A DNA stretch of 64,000 bases from Saccostrea cucullata (lineage: Eukaryota): positions 1-64,000 of the forward strand of contig NW_026937195.1 in NCBI RefSeq assembly GCF_032062105.1, in the 5' to 3' direction. Each line of letters begins with the position of its first letter. The stretch's first letter is position 1. A program made the position numbers and the translations under genes. Positions 55,430-64,000 of this stretch are shown here, in pieces. The notes under the pieces were generated by a model. It did no database searches, had not been told where the DNA came from, and saw only the letters and a program-made list of their open reading frames with translations.

Positions 55430-56845
55430 TGTCATCAGACCAAAACTGTAGGAGGAGTAACGTTTTAAGGTAGTCCGATACTCAGATTTATATAATTAGC
55501 AGTTAAGTAATCAAAAATACTCATTAAAGTATCTCTGAATCACCAAAGTTATGCAAATTTATCCGCAGTATTTCTTTAAAGTTAAAGATTAAAGTTAATC
55601 ATATTATATAAAAAAAAAAATAGCCAAATCTCCAACGTTTTTGTAAAAGAAGCGAATTGGAATATCAGCAATGCATTTGATTTTCTAATAGAAAATTGAT
55701 CAACAAATATATTTTAGGTTAAGAAATGATAGGAATCCATGCATTTAGAGAAATCGTCATGATTTTCATACTTATTTGGTATTTTTTGTCTTCTATTTCC
55801 ATCATGTGTTCTATAATACATAGTGTAAAAGACTTTGCTATCATAACAAGACGCCACAAATCAATTTTTATTTCTTATCATGCTAATAAGCATTTGTATC
55901 TTTGGCTGGATTCAAGAAAATCTCATTTCTCTAAAACTGCATGAATTATTTTTCCTTTTATTGGGTCCAAATGTCAATTTTTATAAGACTTTTTCTAAGA
56001 CTTCAAAAAACATTTAATTTTATAAAGATGGATAAAATAAAAATTGTTGAATGAAAAAATTAGTTTTTAATTCAAATTAAATACTAATTTTTGGAGTTAT
56101 CCTTCCTAGCTGAGGATCGGAAATCCTTAAAGGAATTTCACAGACATTTCTATCTCAAGTAACCATGGCAACACCGTTCATAGAAATCAAAAACTGATGC
56201 ACTGAAATACTAGTATGTATCACACTGTAGTCTACTTGTTGCCAAGTTATATTGAATTCAGACCAAAACTGTAGAAGCAGTAGCGTTTTAAAGGAATTTC
56301 ACAGAAAATTCTATTTTTAGTTACCATGGCAATACTATTCATCAAAAAACCGATGCACTCTTTTATGTATCTTAGTGTAGTCTACTCGTGTGCCAAGTTA
56401 TATTGAAATCAGACCAAAACTGTAGAAGTTGTAGCATTTTAAAGGAATTTCACAGAAAATTCTTTTTTTAGTAACCATGGCTACAATCAAAAACCTATGC
56501 ACTAAATAATTTATCTTAGTGCAGTTTACCTGTGCGCAAAGTTATATTGAAATCAGACCAAAACTGTAGGATGAGTAGCATTTTAAACGAATTTCACAGA
56601 AAATTTATTTTTAGTAACCATGGCAACACCGTTCATCGAAATAAAAAACGAATGCACTATTTTATGTATCTTAGTGTACGCTACTTGTTGCCAAGATATA
56701 TTGAAATCAGACCAAAACTGTCGAAGGAGTAGCGTTTTGAAAAATTGTTTACAGTCAGATGGACAGCTAGACGGACGGACGGATGATGGACTCCTTACTA
56801 TTGCATAAGCTCTTCTGGTCTCTGACCAGTTAAGAGCTAAAAATA
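55430..56845 (-). mobile_element. HINE-like element with ~135-150-bp tandem units, interrupted by a TTAA MITE (~55469-56126; inverted relative at ~57510-58161)
   Basis: Repeated CAGACCAAAACTGTAG..AGGAATTTCACAGA..AACCATGGCAA; GACG microsatellite and GAGCTAAAAA end. Confidence 0.7.
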
Positions 56846-58913
56846 ATATAAATTATTTTCCAGTCTAAATCGTTGTAATGCAGAATTATTGGAAACTGGT
56901 CTCTGACCAGTGAGCTAAAAAATAATATTAAATTATTTTCCAGTCTATATCTTTGTAATGCAGAATTATTGGAAACTCATACTTGCTACAAAAATTATTT
57001 ATGGCCTGAGGGTATGTCATGAATTTGACTCAAGGTCAATTTGGCGAGTAAAGGTAAGTGATAGAGAATGGTGAGAAAATATCTTGGTTATAACCTAGCA
57101 GAGGCGAATCTTTGGAAACTCGAATTACTTGTACAAAAATTTCCTCTGACCTGAGTGTGTCATGACCTTGACCCAAATTCATTTTCGCAAGTTTGAATAT
57201 TCTCTGGCAGATAAAAAGATGTGGAATTGTTGTCAAATCAATACAACTTAGCAGCGGAGAAACATTGCAAACTAATACTTGTAAAATGTTACAAAAATTG
57301 TTCATGACCTGATGGTGTTTTCTACCTTGACACAATAGGTCTTCTGTGTAATTCAAGGTCACTGGTATAAAAAAAGGGCAAAATTAAAGTCTTTAATTTT
57401 CTAATGGAGTAATATTGTGCGTCCATTTTTCAATTAAATGTTACTTATCGGACATAGTTATGCCTCTTGGACTTAGAAAAATTACAATTATTTGTGGAAG
57501 GGGGCTTAAGAATAATATCCAATCCTAAGCCAGAAAGAATTTCTCCAAAAATTAATATTTAATTTTAAATGCATAAAAATTAAGCTTGGAAATGAAATTT
57601 TTTCATGCAACAATATTCATCTTTATAAGATCCAAGGATTTTGAAAGTCTTAAAAAAGGTCCTATAAAAGTTGAAATTTGTACCCTATAAAAGAAAGAAA
57701 ATAAAGTTTTAGAAAAAATAAGATTTTCTTGATTCCAGCCTTAGATACCAATGCTTAATAGCATGATATAAAATAAGAATGAATTGATTTGTAGTGACCT
57801 GCAATAATAGCAAAAGCCTATTAGACTATGTATTATAGAATACATTACAGAAATATAAGACAAAAATGCCAAATAAGTATAAAAAGCGTGACAATTTCTC
57901 TGAATGCCTAGATACCTATATTTTACCTAAAATATTTTTGTTGATCAATTTGCAATTAGAAAATGCATTACTGATATTCCAATTCGCTTTTTCTGCAAAA
58001 TATTGGAGATTTGACAATTTTCCCAATATAATATGATTAACTTTAATCTTTAACTTTAAAGAAATACTGAGGATAAATCTACATAACTTTGTGGATTAAG
58101 AGATACTTTTATGAGTATTTTTGATTAACTGCTAATTTTATAAATCTGAGAAACAGACTACTTTAAGTGTTTTACAAACATCTCTTGTTTATTTTTAGCC
58201 CTTCTGTGCCAAAGGCTCAAAGAGCTAATGCTATGGCCATTTGTGCAGTGTGCGTAAACTTTTTAGTATATCATTCGTATATAGGTCGATGTAACAAGTG
58301 CAATATTTTAATTCCTACCATGCTCCAGAATAAAATAAATATTTATACTCAATGATTATTATTTACTGAGTATTATACAGATTTATACCTAAGTTATTTG
58401 AAAATAAATTATATTTTCTATCTCCTTTAAGGAATGGTGCATATAGACCTTCTAGTTTGTCATTTGACATTTGACCTGGGAAAGAATATCTCCTAAAAAG
58501 ATATTTGGACCCATGCTGAATACAATTTACTGCAAAACTTAGCTGACTAAGAGGGAGACACTGAGAAAGGAGCAAGATATGGACAGACAGACATGGTGAA
58601 TACAGTATTTTCCCTTCAAATATTTTTAATGAAATAAAAAAAATACTTGTTTTAACAATTTTTATTTTTCTAAAATTGGTGATTTTCTTCACAAACATTT
58701 GTATGTAATAAAGAATAATAAGAACTTGAAAATCTCGAGATCACGTGACACCAACCGGAGATGGACGCTTAAAAATTCTGTCCGGTGTTTGGTCTGTTTT
58801 TGGTGCTAATTTGTTGGGATTTTTATTCCTGTCACTTGAATTTTGGACAACATACGTTCGTGAGTGTCTGGGATACCTTTTATATTATATTCTGTGAATT
58901 ATATACCCCGAAA

Positions 58914-60125
58914 ATGCAAAGGAGAGGAAGATCAAATAGTACAAAGAAAACGGCTGATAAGAGTTCACCTATGGGGGCAGGCAAGACTATTGATACGAAC
59001 TCACTACAAAGCGAAAGCCTTCCAGAGTCGGTCCCGTTAGATAGTGAAAAGGGCAGTGTAGCGAGATCACGGTCTGCTAATAACAAAACTGACGATCATG
59101 ACGCTGAAGAACACAGCCTAAATGCACAGCTTAAGTATGTCTGTGAACAAGCAGAATGTAATTATAATGAAATATCTACACTTAGGTCAGAAAACGCCTA
59201 CTTGCGCAGAGAGGTAGAGCTGCTGCGATCAGTGGTTATCAGGATTGACAGAAAAATGTCTGTGATGGACAATGAAATCACTGATTTGCGAGCTAGGTCT
59301 ATGCGTGACAATATTTTAATACATAACTATCCATATTCCCATAATGAAGATCTTGCTTCTACTATGCCAGAAATTTTTAAGCAAACACTAGGGGTAGACG
59401 TCAAATTCGTTAGAATTCATAGAAACGGAGTTCGTCCTCAGCACTCGGATCGACCAGTGTCTATCACGGCCAAGCTGATGGACGGTAAGAAAAAAGACGA
59501 AATTCTCAGCGCCCAGAAAATTAAAAAAATAGCGAAGGTTCCCTTGCCGTTTTACATTACCCCACAATAACCTCTGTCCATTGTTTCTGCCAGAAATAAA
59601 CTTTTTGACAAATCAGATTCTTTCAAAAAACAGAACATTACTGTGAAAATGTCAAGAAATAGCCTCACTTTACCAAATGGCGATAAATATAGCGAGGAAG
59701 TTCCGCTGCTCACCAGTGCAGATGTTTTACAAATCGAATCGTCTGAAACACAGAAATTAGATGACATTCCTACAAAAAGCGTAGATCCTGTACGAAAAAA
59801 TGGATCTGAATTCTTTGCCATTGGATCTGAGGTAGACTCGGTGGAAAGTGTTCAAAACTTCTACAAGAAGGCCTGCATCGACCCCTATGTCGCCAGTGTC
59901 GACAGCAGAATTTTAGTTTATAGATTCCGAGAAAACGATAAAGTGACTGAAAACTATCATGATGATGGTGAACATGGAGCGGGTCGACGCCTCCTTAAAT
60001 TCATGCAGGACAACCAAATCTTCAACGCGGCTATCATTGTGACGAGATGGATGGGGGATCATATTGGACCCGAGCGTTTTACCATCATGGAGAACCTCCT
60101 GAACGATGTTGCGAATCTACTATAG
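58914..60125 (+). pseudogene. LINE ORF1-like protein (coiled coil, RRM-like, CTD) fused to an IMPACT/YigZ UPF0029 domain; single in-frame TAA at 59568-59570
   Basis: ORFs 58785-59570 and 59643-60125 share a frame; EITDLRARSMRDNILIHN, FVRIHR.G, RPVSITAKL ORF1 motifs; DDGEHGAGRRLL..IIVTRWMGDHIGPERF IMPACT signature; intronless; GGAGATGGACGC-type 5' UTR from ~58739. Confidence 0.8.
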
Positions 60126-60260
60126 GAACAATAAAAAAAACTATGTGAGTGAACTAAAGTGTGAATAGGGACTTTCTCTAATTCATAACATCAATATATT
60201 GTTTTCTTTGGTTCAAGTGCTTTTTATTGACTATTGCGGAAAATGCCACCGTATGGTTCT

Positions 60261-63200
60261 GGCTTCGGGGCCACCAACCCTGAAATTTTCTCACATCTGA
60301 GATTTTACAGAAAATCAGAGATTTTCTGACCAAACTGTGCCACCAAATAAATATTTTTCAAACTCACACTATTCTTTTGAGTTTTTTTCTTATATCTTAT
60401 ATATTTTCAAAAGCGCGTGCCACCAACGTTTTTTCCGACTCTGGTGAGAAAAAAATCAGAGTTTTCTCTGAAAATCTTGAGTTTGGTAAACAGTAAGCTC
60501 AAATAAAAAAACTCACGTGAAATCACTCACCAAAATGGCTGCAAGCTTTGTGAGAAGGCGTCTGCAACGTCGTCGGCGAAGAACTATACGTGTGCCTAGG
60601 AGGATCTTGGATCGTTCAAATCCACTGGAAGGTTTAGGGGATGGAGAGATATTTGAGAGATATAGGTTTTTCCCTGCGACTATTTTCTTCATTGTTGACA
60701 TGTTAAAAGATAACCTTGCTTTCACGAATCTACGAAATAATCCACTTACACCCCTTCACCAAGTCTTGGTCTCGTTGCGATTTTTCGCAACAGGGTCTTT
60801 CTACATCACAATTGGAGACACTTTGAATGTTTCAAAGAGTGCAGCTGGTAGGGCGATAAGGCATGTCACGGACCTTCTGTGCCAACTTACGAGGCGTTTC
60901 ATCAGCCTTCCCCGTGGAGAGGAGCTGCTGCATATCAAGGCAGCATTCCATAAGATTGCCGGTGAGAAAGCTTGTCTGCACATGACCATGACCTTCACTT
61001 ATTCTGTAGCTTGAGCCCGATCATTCACGCATTTCACCACATAATAGTAAATTTAAAACATAAACTAAAATATAACACAAATGTATCATGCAGTCTATTC
61101 ACACGAAGTTCTCCATTTGTACCTAAAGCATGCACATTTTTACAAGCACAGAAAAATCCATATATCAATCGTAAACAGTGCACTAGTACTATTACATGTA
61201 CCATAATAAATTAATCGTCATATAAAGCGCCTCAGTACATACCGAAAAATGGGATTTAATGGGAACGCTTGAACTAAATCTGCCCTCGAAGTAAAATGAC
61301 GTTTTGTTACAAGACATGTATAATTTATGAAGACAAATTAAAAACATATACTTTACACAAAGCACCCTAATGCCAAATGAGCTTAAAAGTGGTGCATGGC
61401 CCGTAGTGACATGCATTATTAAAATTTTATAAAAACCATAATCAATGTCAATATTTTGATGAAAAATTAGATCAAGGCTTTATATCATTAAAAACAAAGT
61501 GGTTTCATTCTGTTGAATTACATGATTTAATTGTGGGGGCTTTAAAAACAGGGGAAAGGGGGAGGGGCTTTATGCCTTAGTCAAAGGGGCGTATTATGGG
61601 GCAAATGCGGCATTAAAGATTTTTCTCATCTTCATACACAACTTCACAAATTATTTCATTCTATATACATATATTAACATCATGATAGAATTAATATGGC
61701 TTGATTAAAAATTACGAAGATGAAAATGCATACTTTTATTCATTACACATGTTAAATACCATATATTCTGGATTTTTTTTCTTGACTTTTTAAAAAAAAA
61801 AATTATTTGCAATTAAGAGAAATTTTTCATAAAAATGTAAAAAAAAAAAAAATCATGATTTTCGAAAAACCTTTCTCAGTTAAAACTTTGTACTCTGTCT
61901 CCTTTTCTTTGAGGATTTTTAAGATCAAAGGACAGGATATTTATATCCAAACCCTTACATGTACCTCTTTTCTCAGGATTTCCAAGTGTTGTGGGGTGTG
62001 TTGACGGGACAATGGTCAAGATAATAGCACCAAAAGTGAACGAGGCTGATTACATATGTCGCAAAGGTTATTATGCCATCAATGTGCAGGTACTTTGAAA
62101 TTTCAAAACTGAATTTCAAAAGATTGATTGCACTTAGTGTACAAAAAGTGGCCCCCGGTTAATTGCGCAAAAATAATATATAGAAAGTAACCCAAAATAG
62201 ATTAATAAAGCTATTCTTCTAGGTCTTAATTGCAACTTTGCAAAATTACAGGAATTAAAAGTAATTAAAAAATAAAGAACGAGGCTGTGTTTTGTAAGAG
62301 GGGTCACTGTAATTCATGAATTTCCATTGTATTTTTCAAATATATTTTTTTGATCAGTTACGCCATATATGGCTTTAACTCGAAAACATCTTAGTTGGAT
62401 ATAATTAATTTTTTTCATTTTATTTGAAAAAATACCCAAAAAATTCATATAAAATAGCTAAATAGCTTAAGAGCTAGTATCGACCTTTCAATGCTAAATC
62501 CCTTGTTTTAAAAGGATGACTCAAAGATCTATAAAATAAAAAGTTGGTGTGGCATTCCACCTTAATGTGACACAATTAAAACCCAACTCGGACAAGCGCA
62601 ACATTCCGGAATTAACACCCACTAGAGGGCTTACTTAATTACCTTAATTAAAACTAAAGCGCCGTTTTCAATGAAAATTTTTGCAAGTAATGTATCACAC
62701 TGCTAACAAGATATCGGTTAGGTGTAAAATTATTAAGATTTGAGTTAATTAGATAAAGTTAAAGGGGTTCAAAAAGGGACCACGGCACTATGCTCAAGTG
62801 GAATCATTCTTTTCTTCAAAATATTCTATAAAATCGACTTCTTTCGCCACAGTGAATTCTTAGTAACACTTTTCTCTCTCTCTTTCGAAAGGTTTATGTC
62901 TTCACATATATAAAATGATTTCAAAATATTTAAAATAGAAATTAAAAACATGCATTGGCTCCCAAAAATAAATCAGACTAAAATATGATTCCATGTTTAA
63001 ACAGTACTTAAAAATTTCACCATTTCATACAGATGATGTGTGATGCTCGATTTAAAATCAGGGACGTGGTTGCTAAGTGGCCTGGTAGCGTCCATGATTC
63101 CAGAATTTTCCGGGAATCACACCTCTGCAGAGTTATGGAGGAAGGTAATTAGGCCAATAAAAATGAATTTTTTGGTTCTCAGACCCTCCCTCATCTCTTA

Positions 63201-64000
63201 CAAGTGTGCCTCATTGACCCTCTCTATTGCTAAATTAATAAAATTAAAAAAAGAAATAAACTGCCTCACCATTTTTTGAGGTATTGTACAATTTAAAATG
63301 CCTCCCTCCCTCAACATATTCTTTAAAAAAAAAAAAGGCTTGAGAACCAAGGAATTAAATTTGCATGGCCTTATGAAATGGAAATCAATTAAATTATTAC
63401 TGGATATTTCCAATCTGTATCCTTATATAATGGTTTGCTGAAGAATTTCTTGAATTTAATTTTAAGGACAGCTGCAAGGTGTGCTGTTGGGGGACTCAGG
63501 ATATGGGTTAAAACCATATTTATTAACGCCATACTTAGCTACAGAGACATCAGCCACACAAAAGTTTAATGCAGCTCATTGCAGAACCAGGTTGGTACAA
63601 TGATATACTCCCCCCCCCTTTTTTTAAATTGAGCATGCATTCAAATATTTGTATCATCACGTTCACATCCATTTTTTAATGCACAGAGTGACAATAGAAC
63701 AGGCCTTTGGAGTCTTAAAGAAAAGATTTAACGCCCTGCATTCAGGCCTGAGAACCTGCCCAGAGAGGGCTTGCCGGGTGATCACTGCATGTGCCGTCCT
63801 CCATAACATCGGCCTGGATAGGGGAGACATATTAAGAGATGTCCCTGAGATCACTGCAATAAATGAAGCCTGTGAAGTGCCCCTTCCAGAGGATGTCCAG
63901 GGTCGCACAGTGAGGGATCACATTAAAGACACATATTTCAGGTATAAAATACACATCAAATTCTTTCATTCTGAGTGTCCAGTCCATGAAATTTCATACT
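60261..64000 (+). mobile_element. PIF/Harbinger DNA transposon, 5' part (runs out of the window)
   Basis: Subterminal (G/C)CACCAA and TCAGAG/TCTGAG repeats at 60261-60480 directly upstream of the transposase; second TIR not in the window, so the boundary is approximate. Confidence 0.6.
60535..63941 (+). CDS. Harbinger/HARBI1-like DDE transposase. Exons 60535-60961, 61977-62089, 63033-63144, 63467-63590, 63687-63941 (last few codons probably beyond the window)
   Basis: Phase-consistent GT-AG exons: [89 protein letters not shown]; no stops. Confidence 0.93.

What the first reader, a model, noticed from the sequence alone, without database searches (positions are those of the whole stretch)
58739..60260. 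LINE ORF1p that has captured an IMPACT/YigZ ancient domain
Seen: one intronless 403-codon frame with a single TAA, running from a disordered N-terminus through a coiled coil, RSMRDNILIHN/RIHR/RPVSI motifs and a CTD into a complete UPF0029 domain (S.F.A..V.S...ASVDSRILVYR...DDGEHGAGRRLL...VTRWMGDHIGPERF). Known: these N-terminal motifs are typical of L1/CR1-type ORF1 RNA chaperones. IMPACT/Yih1 antagonises the eIF2-alpha kinase GCN2 mainly through an RWD domain, which is absent here, while its ancient domain is poorly understood. ORF1 accessory domains I know of are PHD, esterase and CCHC, not UPF0029. Inference: a retrotransposon family displaying IMPACT domains on a trimeric ORF1p, possibly to engage ribosomes or nucleic acid, or to modulate the GCN2 stress response. 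The His of the usual ATH motif is replaced (VDS). ORF2 is presumably displaced by the Harbinger insertion at ~60261.
Basis: partly seen in the sequence, partly recalled or inferred. Interest (0 to 1): 0.82.

Follow-up and report, generated by a model that had tools for sequence, protein, structure and literature searches.

The report
Oyster LINE ORF1 carrying IMPACT domain

Summary
Window 58737-60261 is the 5' part of a LINE. It holds one frame (ATG 58914, TAG 60123-60125) with a single in-frame TAA at 59568-59570.

- **Domains.** The C-terminal piece matches Pfam UPF0029 (E 6e-15). A model of the intact sister protein matches YigZ/Yih1 (Z 16.2, 15.6 and 11.7) and human L1 ORF1p (RRM Z 10.9; coiled coil-RRM-CTD Z about 10).
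- **The TAA is private to this copy.** All eight closest copies have a sense codon there.
- **The family is large.** The genome (Saccostrea cucullata or very near) holds at least 150 matches in many subfamilies. Dozens have one open 396-482 aa ORF1-IMPACT frame, followed about 450 nt later by an APE-RT ORF2 (open frames of 1258-1314 aa).
- **It is recently active and constrained.** Three copies are 99.7-99.8% identical. dN/dS of the IMPACT domain is 0.09 in the two informative pairs, as low as the coiled coil.
- **It is not the host gene.** A separate multi-exon IMPACT gene exists. All LINE-borne domains form one clade.
- **A second clade exists.** A distant, probably molluscan clade keeps the canonical ATHN motif but has a very different ORF2.

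No paper linking UPF0029 to retrotransposons was found. The mechanism (ribosome docking?) is inferred only. This scan noted the same family earlier on other DNA of this genome.

The parts
58737..60261 (+). 5' fragment of a LINE copy: 5' UTR, ORF1, and the start of the ORF1-ORF2 spacer
   Evidence: blastn against sister copies. Seven distinct closest copies (each held as two loci) align from 58737, six of them through to 60261, at 86-92% identity. Several others also end at 60261.
58737..58913 (+). 5' UTR. 58737 is the common 5' end shared with sister copies
58914..59567 (+). ORF1 part 1 (218 codons): disordered N-terminus, coiled coil, L1-type RRM
   Evidence: Translation. AF2 model of the 404-aa sister protein: residues 1-59 disordered, helix 59-130, RRM 134-218. 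RRM against human L1ORF1p 2w7a: Z 10.9, rmsd 2.2 A over 85 residues.
59568..59570 (+). In-frame TAA, a nonsense change private to this copy, at the RRM/CTD junction
   Evidence: All 8 closest copies have a glutamine codon at the homologous position. Intact single frames occur in many copies.
59571..60122 (+). ORF1 part 2 (184 codons): CTD, linker and the UPF0029/IMPACT ancient domain
59802..60104 (+). UPF0029 (IMPACT/YigZ ancient domain) as matched by Pfam
   Evidence: PF01205, E 6.1e-15, residues 78-178 of part 2. Fold of the sister protein, residues 286-404: 2cve Z 16.2, 1vi7 Z 15.6, 6bqi Z 11.7.
60123..60125 (+). TAG stop codon of ORF1
60126..60261 (+). Remnant of the ORF1-ORF2 spacer. Homology to all sister copies stops at 60261
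   Evidence: In intact copies the spacer is about 450 nt.
60262..61014 (+). Unrelated sequence that interrupts or replaces the rest of the LINE. It holds an ORF (60535-61011) resembling the N-terminal exon of a PIF/Harbinger transposase
   Evidence: HTH_Tnp_4 at E 0.017 only. No matching terminal inverted repeat lies inside the window. No LINE ORF2 homology lies in 60262-64000.

Best explanation
Window 58737-60261 is a decayed 5' fragment of a non-LTR retrotransposon (LINE).

**What the family encodes.** ORF1 encodes an L1-type ORF1p: a disordered N-terminus, a trimer-forming coiled coil, an RRM and a CTD. Its C-terminus is fused to a UPF0029 'ancient' domain of the eukaryotic IMPACT/Yih1 type. 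The fusion lacks IMPACT's RWD domain. In intact family members this is one 396-482 aa protein. About 450 nt downstream lies an APE-RT ORF2 with open frames of 1258-1314 aa.

**State of the window copy.** It is dead. It carries a private nonsense codon at the RRM/CTD junction, and everything after the first 136 nt of the inter-ORF spacer is missing or displaced.

**How firm the identity is (about 0.95).** The domain was captured once, since all LINE-borne domains form one clade. It has since been kept under purifying selection as strong as on the coiled coil, so it is a working part of the retrotransposon and not a passenger.

**Mechanism (inferred, about 0.3).** The three IMPACT domains on the ORF1p trimer dock it to the translation machinery. 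Cellular IMPACT/Yih1 associates with translating ribosomes. Docking would favour co-translational loading of ORF1p onto its own RNA (cis-preference), or translation of the distant ORF2. An RNA- or nucleotide-directed binding or enzymatic role is about equally open.
For: **Shown by tools**
- Frame and motifs.
- UPF0029 above Pfam's cut-off in the window copy and in all 53 aligned family members.
- Fold: residues 286-404 of the AF2 model (pLDDT 82.8) match TT1547 and YigZ at Z 16.2 and 15.6, and Yih1 at Z 11.7. Residues 132-219 match the human L1ORF1p RRM at Z 10.9, ahead of all other RRMs (at most 7.5). Residues 87-263 match the L1ORF1p trimer chains at Z about 10.
- Family member P0203 passes Pfam Transposase_22 (28.2 bits, cut-off 22.4) together with UPF0029. 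It aligns to the window's N-half at 30% identity, E 1e-13.
- At least 150 genomic matches per half. Many have a single open frame spanning both halves.
- ORF2 with Exo_endo_phos, Exo_endo_phos_2 and RVT_1 lies downstream in the same genome, in Saccostrea echinata, and on three complete metagenomic elements.
- The nearest sister copy, on C3960, has an open 404-aa ORF1 and an open 1263-aa ORF2 frame.
- Three copies on different contigs are 99.7-99.8% identical over 2.87 kb.
- dN/dS of the IMPACT domain is 0.09 at dS 0.33 and at dS 0.69. The coiled coil gives 0.05-0.09 and RRM/CTD gives 0.11-0.16.
- The host has its own multi-exon IMPACT gene on C1292.
- All 53 LINE domains form one clade, support 100/100.
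- Homotrimer prediction: ipSAE 0.89 against a best control of 0.00. Runs agree in at least 98% of contacts and partner pLDDT is at least 87. The interface lies along the heptads of residues 73-130.

**From the literature**
- IMPACT and Yih1 associate with translating ribosomes, and the function of the ancient domain is unknown (PMC7140605, PMC4503747).
Against: - The window copy's N-half gives no Pfam Transposase_22 hit. None of the 53 aligned members reaches it at E 0.1. Only P0203 does.
- No ORF2 of this particular copy was found in the window or among the best genome matches.
- The trimer pass may come from the model's memory of the solved human L1ORF1p trimer.
- There is nothing direct for the mechanism. 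The Yih1 region mapped as sufficient for ribosome binding overlaps the inter-domain linker and is not clearly the ancient domain (PMC4503747).
- In the oyster clade the ATHN and S.F..H.A motifs, invariant in cellular IMPACT, are relaxed. The His position is H, N or S. The ancestral biochemical activity may therefore have been altered there.
Confidence: 0.85

Rival explanations
1. These are cellular IMPACT paralogues, a host gene family expansion as NCBI's names imply ('protein IMPACT homolog', 'IMPACT-like'), and not transposon proteins.
For: NCBI and UniRef name several members this way in Saccostrea cucullata, Ostrea edulis and Magallana gigas. The domain is a bona fide UPF0029.
Against: The frames are intronless and multi-copy, with a shared 5' end. 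In intact copies they are followed by an APE-RT ORF2 at a fixed distance. The N-half has an L1ORF1p fold and no RWD domain. Near-identical copies lie on different contigs. The true host IMPACT is a separate multi-exon gene with 62-88% identity to C. gigas IMPACT.
Confidence: 0.02
2. The TAA is functional. Either the family encodes two separate proteins (ORF1 and an IMPACT-domain ORF), or it uses programmed read-through.
For: The window copy has exactly one in-frame TAA between the two halves.
Against: All 8 closest copies have a sense codon at that position. At least 10 subfamilies, and annotated proteins in 5 bivalve genera, have one uninterrupted frame. The stop falls inside the ORF1p fold, at the RRM/CTD junction, and not at the boundary of the IMPACT domain.
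Confidence: 0.02
3. Alternative mechanism: the domain blunts the host GCN2/integrated stress response, as cellular IMPACT does, which would protect LINE translation.
For: Cellular IMPACT/Yih1 inhibits GCN2 (PMC7140605). The captured domain is of the eukaryotic IMPACT type: the profile hits Yih1 at 2.9e-14 and no bacterial YigZ by sequence.
Against: GCN2 inhibition works through the RWD domain competing for GCN1 (PMC7140605). No RWD is present in any of the 53 members.
Confidence: 0.07
4. Alternative mechanism: the domain is an RNA- or nucleotide-directed binding or catalytic module acting within the LINE RNP (for example on the RNA or its ends), or mainly a structural brace of the trimer.
For: The residues invariant in all LINE versions (Y-R, D-D-(G)-E..A-G, R-(W)-x-G, G-x-x-R-F) are the signature loops that cluster on one face in YigZ/Yih1 (PMC4503747). 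In the predicted trimer, residues 323-331 and 381 of the domain touch the neighbouring coiled coil at 105-111. This fits a docking role, and it fits the relaxed ATHN motif of the oyster clade.
Against: No biochemical activity is known for any UPF0029 protein (PMC7140605, PMC4503747). The contacts are predictions only.
Confidence: 0.3

Closest known systems
L1-type (Type II) ORF1p: coiled coil, RRM, CTD (human L1ORF1p, PDB 2ykp/2ykq/2w7a; Pfam Transposase_22)
   Same: It has the same domain order and fold over residues about 87-263 of the sister protein (Z about 10). The RRM is the best structural match among all RRMs (Z 10.9). It carries the R-x-R-x-N and R-x-H-R...P-R-P-I-type motifs. A homotrimer through the coiled coil is predicted. 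It sits upstream of an APE-RT ORF2 of L1-like length, whose RT hits human ORF2p at E 4e-34.
   Different: It carries an extra C-terminal domain of about 115 aa (UPF0029), which is not among the ORF1 accessory domains listed in the surveys read (PMC5203782). Its sequence is too diverged for Pfam Transposase_22 in the window copy. The ORF1-ORF2 spacer is about 450 nt.
Eukaryotic IMPACT / yeast Yih1 (RWD plus ancient domain; PDB 6bqi)
   Same: The ancient domain is homologous: profile E 2.9e-14, fold Z 11.7. The signature YR, DDGE..AG, RW.G and G..RF residues are kept. As in IMPACT, the domain is the C-terminal end of the protein.
   Different: It has no RWD domain and no acidic linker. It is intronless and multi-copy. 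It is only 26-44% identical to oyster IMPACT. The ATHN motif is lost in the window's subfamily. It is not an orthologue, because the host keeps its own multi-exon IMPACT gene.
Bacterial YigZ / TT1547 (UPF0029 plus DUF1949; PDB 1vi7, 2cve)
   Same: These are the best structural matches for the domain: Z 15.6-16.2, rmsd 2.0-2.2 A over 110-115 residues.
   Different: There is no DUF1949 C-terminal domain. Sequence similarity is weak: NCBIfam YigZ gives 22.7 bits against a cut-off of 168, and there is no hmmsearch hit to 1vi7 or 2cve.
LINE ORF1 proteins with accessory domains (esterase in CR1/L2, PHD, CCHC knuckles; Khazina & Weichenrieder types, Metcalfe & Casane modularity, as summarised in PMC5203782)
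   Same: The principle is the same: a host-derived domain is bolted onto the ORF1 scaffold, and ORF1 evolves in a modular and possibly reticulate way.
   Different: The domain is different. UPF0029 has no known biochemical function, and it was not found in the searchable literature as a retrotransposon domain.

Membership tests
LINE (non-LTR retrotransposon) | An ORF2 encoding an APE endonuclease and a reverse transcriptase lies downstream of ORF1 | tested here: met
   Met for the family. Sister and other copies in the genome have it, as do S. echinata L061 and the complete elements L062, L063 and L067. Not met for the window copy itself: no ORF2 lies in 60262-64000 or among the top genome hits on its contig.
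LINE (non-LTR retrotransposon) | Interspersed multi-copy element with young, near-identical copies | tested here: met
   At least 150 matches per half. L010, L011 and L013 are 99.7-99.8% identical.
LINE (non-LTR retrotransposon) | 3' tail (poly-A or microsatellite) and target-site duplications | tested here: inconclusive
   Elements of the distant clade end in AATAAA followed by (TATC)n. S. echinata L061 has an A-rich stretch about 300 nt after ORF2. Target-site duplications were not examined, and the window copy lacks its 3' end.
L1-type (Type II) ORF1p / Transposase_22 | Long coiled coil that trimerises | tested here: met
   AF2 gives a helix at 59-130. Homotrimer prediction: ipSAE 0.89 against a best control of 0.00, with a heptad interface at 73-130. 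This is a prediction only and may reflect memory of the solved trimer.
L1-type (Type II) ORF1p / Transposase_22 | RRM followed by CTD with the L1ORF1p fold | tested here: met
   2w7a: Z 10.9, rmsd 2.2 A over 85 residues. 2ykp/2ykq: Z 9.8-10.1 over 164-168 residues. Foldseek 2yko: E 1.5e-6.
L1-type (Type II) ORF1p / Transposase_22 | Sequence match to Pfam PF02994 above its cut-off | tested here: not met
   Neither the window copy nor any of the 53 aligned members hits it. The family member P0203 does: 28.2 bits against 22.4. The link is therefore transitive.
L1 clade (by ORF2) | The RT groups with L1 in a reference phylogeny, and ORF2 has a C-terminal Cys-rich domain | tested here: inconclusive
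   The RT of L061 hits human L1 ORF2p at 3.7e-34 and R2 at 1.9e-14. zf-RVT scores 21.3 bits, below its cut-off of 27.5. ORF2 is 1258-1314 aa long. No reference set of LINE clades was available for a tree.
UPF0029 / IMPACT ancient domain (PF01205) | Pfam match above the gathering score | tested here: met
   55.6 bits against 27, E 6.1e-15. All 53 of 53 aligned members match.
UPF0029 / IMPACT ancient domain (PF01205) | YigZ/Yih1 fold | tested here: met
   Z 16.2 (2cve), 15.6 (1vi7) and 11.7 (6bqi) over model residues 282/286-404.
UPF0029 / IMPACT ancient domain (PF01205) | Full set of signature loops (S.F..H.A, ATHN, DDGE..AG, RWYGG.HLGP.RF) | tested here: inconclusive
   YR, DD(G)E..AG..L, R.(W).G and G..RF are kept in all LINE versions. 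S.F..H.A and ATHN are kept only in the distant clade. The window's subfamily has VDSR in place of ATHN.
IMPACT/Yih1 protein (orthologue) | An N-terminal RWD domain that binds GCN1 | tested here: not met
   No RWD (PF05773) occurs in any member. Cellular IMPACTs carry it. The host orthologue is elsewhere, on C1292.
Bacterial YigZ | A C-terminal DUF1949 domain and the TIGR00257 equivalog score | tested here: not met
   The protein ends with the UPF0029 domain. TIGR00257 scores 22.7 bits against a cut-off of 167.95.

The most novel reading that the evidence does not exclude
The UPF0029 'ancient domain' is a portable module that docks proteins onto the translating ribosome or its RNA. Mollusc LINEs exploit it to keep the ORF1p trimer on the ribosome that is translating their own RNA, either for cis-preference or to promote translation of the far-downstream ORF2. 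The same ORF1-IMPACT cassette has been exchanged between two unrelated ORF2 lineages: L1-like elements with an ORF2 of about 1270 aa, and elements with an ORF2 of about 1000-1050 aa that end in a (TATC)n tail. If so, the cassette would be a self-contained selectable unit, and the first genetic system in which the function of this universally conserved domain can be read out, as retrotransposition frequency.
Probability: 0.2. Interest if true: 0.85.

Novelty: new variant of a known kind. Interest (0 to 1): 0.64.

Why it matters
1. It adds a new accessory domain to the known repertoire of LINE ORF1 proteins. The example is clean: one capture of a host domain, kept under strong purifying selection in an element that is still, or was very recently, active.

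2. UPF0029 is conserved from bacteria to humans, yet reviews still call its function unknown (PMC7140605, PMC4503747). A retrotransposon that depends on it offers an assayable phenotype. It also offers a natural mutational scan, showing which signature residues stay invariant and which are dispensable.

3. There is a practical consequence. Gene models named 'protein IMPACT homolog', 'IMPACT-like' or 'Impact N-terminal domain-containing protein' in oyster, pearl-oyster and ark-clam annotations include transposon ORF1s. These can contaminate gene-family, expression and selection-scan analyses.

Tried and rejected
- **Pfam and NCBIfam on the N-half of the window copy.** Only coiled-coil noise came back. 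The L1 relationship had to be shown by fold and through P0203.
- **The fetch from genomes for 11-kb contexts.** A later attempt to cut loci failed for the same reason. Full ORF2s of this genome were therefore never read; only open-frame lengths are known.
- **Literature.** UPF0029, PF01205 or 'Impact N-terminal' together with retrotransposon gave nothing relevant. Broad searches with 'IMPACT' and 'YigZ' were swamped by unrelated words. Ivancevic 2016 and the gastropod non-LTR paper do not mention such a domain. The term searches sent to the bivalve TE paper (PMC10294476) failed on term format, so that paper was not read.
- **Bacterial YigZ as an outgroup for the domain tree.** It could not be fetched. 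The donor lineage is unresolved, and the placement next to nematodes is probably long-branch attraction.
- **Atlas search with the distant clade's ORF2.** It gave no clade name.
- **Harbinger terminal inverted repeats.** None pairs with the sequence at 60262 inside the window.
- **Host IMPACT exons on C1292.** C. gigas and O. edulis IMPACT were used as the mollusc cellular references instead.
- **The window protein.** It was never read through its stop. Its two pieces were searched apart, and the intact sister protein (L003:1501-2712:-) was used for folding.
- **The search of protein representatives.** It was not used: it is costly, and no claim here rests on the absence of relatives.
Full report
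**1. Observation**

On the + strand one frame runs from ATG 58914 to TAG 60123-60125. It holds a single internal TAA at 59568-59570, which splits it into 218 and 184 codons. Because read-through proteins may not be passed by reference, the two pieces were searched apart.

- The second piece matches Pfam UPF0029 (PF01205) over residues 78-178, at E 6.1e-15 and 55.6 bits against a cut-off of 27.
- It matches the bacterial YigZ equivalog only weakly, at 22.7 bits against 168.
- The first piece gives only coiled-coil noise.

**2. It is a transposon copy, and the TAA is private to it**

Each half finds at least 150 places in the window's own 1.17-Gb genome, at 22-100% identity. Many lie in single open frames of 396-482 aa that span both halves.

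By blastn, the closest copies align to the window from 58737, most of them through to 60261, at 86-92% identity. The element's 5' end is therefore 58737. The homology breaks at 60261, 136 nt into the ORF1-ORF2 spacer.

At the position of the TAA, all eight closest copies carry a glutamine codon. The stop lies at the RRM/CTD junction of the fold and not at the boundary of the IMPACT domain.

Eleven distinct intact ORF1 proteins were extracted from the fetched loci, falling into four subfamilies. Further subfamilies with intact frames of 405-475 aa appear in the genome tables.

**3. ORF2**

In intact copies a second frame opens about 450 nt after the ORF1 stop. It starts with Exo_endo_phos and Exo_endo_phos_2, the APE endonuclease of LINEs.

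A genome search with that APE segment shows open ORF2 frames of 1258-1314 aa in many subfamilies. The nearest sister of the window copy, on C3960, has a 1263-aa frame and also an open 404-aa ORF1. No hit falls on the window's own contig, and there is no ORF2 homology in 60262-64000.

In Saccostrea echinata (L061) a 421-aa ORF1-IMPACT is followed by APE, RVT_1 and a sub-threshold zf-RVT, spread over four broken frames. Its RT hits human L1 ORF2p at E 3.7e-34 and R2 at 1.9e-14.

Three copies on different contigs (L010, L011, L013) are 99.7-99.8% identical over 2.87 kb. The family has therefore moved very recently.

**4. Fold of ORF1p**

An AlphaFold2 model of the intact sister protein was built from a 53-sequence alignment. 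It has pLDDT 82.8 and pTM 0.71. It shows:

- a disordered N-terminus, residues 1-59;
- one long helix, 59-130;
- an RRM, 134-218;
- a CTD and linker, up to about 285;
- an alpha/beta domain, 294-403.

Foldseek finds Yih1 (3e-7), the human L1ORF1p trimer (1.5e-6, target TM 0.57-0.59), TT1547 and YigZ. The structural aligner gives these matches:

| Model residues | Matched structure | Z | rmsd / aligned residues |
|---|---|---|---|
| 286-404 | 2cve (TT1547) | 16.2 | 2.0 A / 110 |
| 286-404 | 1vi7 (YigZ) | 15.6 | 2.2 A / 115 |
| 282-404 | 6bqi (Yih1) | 11.7 | 2.9 A / 112 |
| 132-219 | 2w7a (human L1ORF1p RRM) | 10.9 | 2.2 A / 85 |
| 87-263 (range taken from 2ykq and 2ykp) | 2ykp, 2ykq (L1ORF1p trimer chains) | 9.8-10.1 | 3.3 A / 164-168 |

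All other RRMs score at most 7.5.

One family member, P0203, passes Pfam Transposase_22 (28.2 bits against 22.4) together with UPF0029. It aligns to the window's N-half at 30% identity and E 1e-13.

A three-copy complex prediction of residues 72-404 scored ipSAE 0.89, against 0.00 for the best of three controls. The runs agreed in at least 98% of contacts and the partner pLDDT was at least 87. The interface follows the heptads of residues 73-130. The tool's calibration: 21 of 30 proteins solved as pairs of one chain reached the mark, and 0 of 23 solved as single chains did. That calibration held two copies, not three. A solved human trimer exists, so the pass may be from memory.

**5. The domain is a selected part of the element**

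In the two informative comparisons, Nei-Gojobori dN/dS for the IMPACT domain is 0.09:

- window against the C3960 copy, dS 0.33;
- L013 against L014, dS 0.69.

The corresponding values are 0.05-0.09 for the coiled coil, 0.11-0.16 for RRM/CTD and 0.3-0.7 for the disordered N-terminus. Very young pairs give noisy, higher values, as expected for neutral decay after insertion.

Across 53 proteins the only invariant columns lie in the IMPACT domain: Y337, R338, D351, E354, G386 and R389.

Compared with 20 cellular IMPACTs, every LINE version keeps Y-R, D-D-(G)-E..A-G..L, R-(W)-x-G and G-x-x-R-F. The S.F..H.A and ATHN motifs survive only in the distant clade. In the oyster clade the His position is H, N or S, and the window's subfamily has VDSR.

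**6. Origin**

The host has its own IMPACT gene: several exons on contig C1292, 62-88% identical to Crassostrea gigas IMPACT. The LINE-borne domains are only 26-44% identical to that protein. The exons were not joined.

The family profile hits yeast Yih1 in the PDB at 2.9e-14 and hits no bacterial YigZ by sequence.

In a maximum-likelihood tree of 73 domains over 121 columns, all 53 LINE domains form one clade (100/100) on a stem of 1.28 substitutions per site. There are two deep sub-clades. Their position among cellular IMPACTs, next to nematodes, is not trustworthy, and no bacterial outgroup could be included.

A single ancient capture of a eukaryotic IMPACT-type domain is the simplest reading. 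ORF1 relatives without UPF0029 also exist, namely P0214 and P0216-P0219, which fits accretion of the domain onto an existing ORF1.

**7. Distribution**

Named relatives come from Saccostrea, Crassostrea/Magallana, Ostrea, Pinctada and Tegillarca. Several are annotated 'protein IMPACT homolog' or 'IMPACT-like'.

Four proteins from the window's genome are identical in the domain to S. cucullata entries. The genome is therefore that species or one very near it.

A second clade, P0056-P0066 and P0188-P0213, is known only from metagenomic and Logan contigs. The nearest Atlas clusters, of 57 and 242 members, are molluscan where a phylum is recorded. Three complete elements of this clade (L062, L063, L067; 5.4-6.4 kb) have an ORF1-IMPACT of 354-385 aa and an APE-RT ORF2 of 999-1050 aa. 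L062 and L067 end in AATAAA followed by (TATC)n.

**8. An unexpected discordance**

| Comparison between the two clades | Identity | Pairwise E |
|---|---|---|
| ORF1-IMPACT, collinear over about 320 aa | 24-31% | 1e-24 to 1e-40 |
| APE segments of ORF2 | 21-30% | 1e-4 to 1e-9 |
| RT segments of ORF2 | 21-23% | 1e-5 to 1e-9 |

The distant clade's ORF2 has no hit to human L1 ORF2p at E 1e-5. Its best hit is R2, at 1e-11. RT is normally the slowest-evolving part of a LINE. The cassette has therefore probably been exchanged between different LINE lineages (my estimate is about 0.6). A reference RT phylogeny is needed to settle this.

**9. Mechanism**

Shown: the domain is a conserved, selected, C-terminal part of an L1-type ORF1p that is predicted to trimerise.

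From the literature: cellular IMPACT/Yih1 associates with translating ribosomes, actin, GCN1 and Cdc28. GCN2 inhibition needs the RWD domain. The ancient domain's function is unknown, and its invariant loops cluster on one face (PMC7140605, PMC4503747).

Inferred, in order of my odds:

- **About 0.3.** The domain docks the ORF1p trimer to the translation machinery, which would help cis-loading onto the LINE's own RNA or translation of the distant ORF2.
- **About 0.3.** The domain has an RNA- or nucleotide-directed role, or a structural role, inside the RNP. The predicted trimer places residues 323-331 (the ATHN-equivalent loop) and 381 against the neighbour's coiled coil.
- **About 0.07.** The domain antagonises GCN2. 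This is unlikely without the RWD domain.

**10.

The sequence after 60261 contains an ORF (60535-61011) with only a weak HTH_Tnp_4 match, E 0.017. No terminal inverted repeat partner lies in the window. A PIF/Harbinger insertion is plausible but not shown. Whether the rest of the LINE lies beyond it could not be checked.

**11. Novelty**

No paper in the searchable library couples UPF0029, PF01205 or 'Impact N-terminal' with retrotransposons. The broad L1 survey lists many ORF1 variants but not this one. Repbase and Dfam could not be consulted.

This scan had already noted the same family on other DNA of this genome (s1-700994, s1-716660). All of that note's claims that are used here were re-tested independently.

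Noticed in passing
L062:2114-5233, L063:2233-5229 and L067:2452-5601, compared with L061:9825-13586 and L003:1-1056: The ORF1-IMPACT cassette sits in front of two very different ORF2 types. One is L1-like: 1258-1314 aa, RT E 4e-34 to human ORF2p. The other is 999-1050 aa, has no L1 hit at 1e-5, and ends in a (TATC)n tail. ORF1 is better conserved between the two groups (24-31% identity, E 1e-24 to 1e-40) than RT is (21-23% identity, E 1e-5 to 1e-9). This suggests the module was exchanged between LINE lineages.
   Followed up: partly
G000 contig C1292, about 494.5-503.5 kb (L064, L065): This is the host's own multi-exon IMPACT gene. Its exons are 62-88% identical to Crassostrea gigas IMPACT, including an RWD exon. 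It is distinct from all the LINE-borne copies.
   Followed up: partly
Proteins P0009, P0012, P0018, P0038, P0054 and others: Public annotations name LINE ORF1 proteins 'protein IMPACT homolog' or 'IMPACT-like' in S. cucullata, O. edulis and M. gigas. 'Protein IMPACT homolog(ue)' appears as a differentially expressed transcript in S. echinata (PMC12564202) and as a high-FST candidate in C. gigas (PMC5989259). Whether those are the real gene or the transposon was not determined.
   Followed up: no
window 56214-56738 (and 56815-56977): A tandem repeat of about 144 bp, 3.5 copies, 81% matches. Related repeats lie in the flanks of two other LINE loci (L045:2955-3618, L052:2813-3409) in inconsistent orientation. 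It is probably an unrelated satellite or another element.
   Followed up: partly
window 60535-61011 (+): An ORF with a weak HTH_Tnp_4 match (E 0.017), typical of the first exon of a PIF/Harbinger transposase. The element's ends were not found inside the window.
   Followed up: partly
G000: C1275:8438-8980, C2032:51084-51695, C1849:60851-61456 and others: Open frames of 354-430 aa match only the coiled-coil/RRM part (residues about 15-211) of the distant-clade ORF1. These are related ORF1 families in the same genome that appear to lack the IMPACT domain.
   Followed up: no
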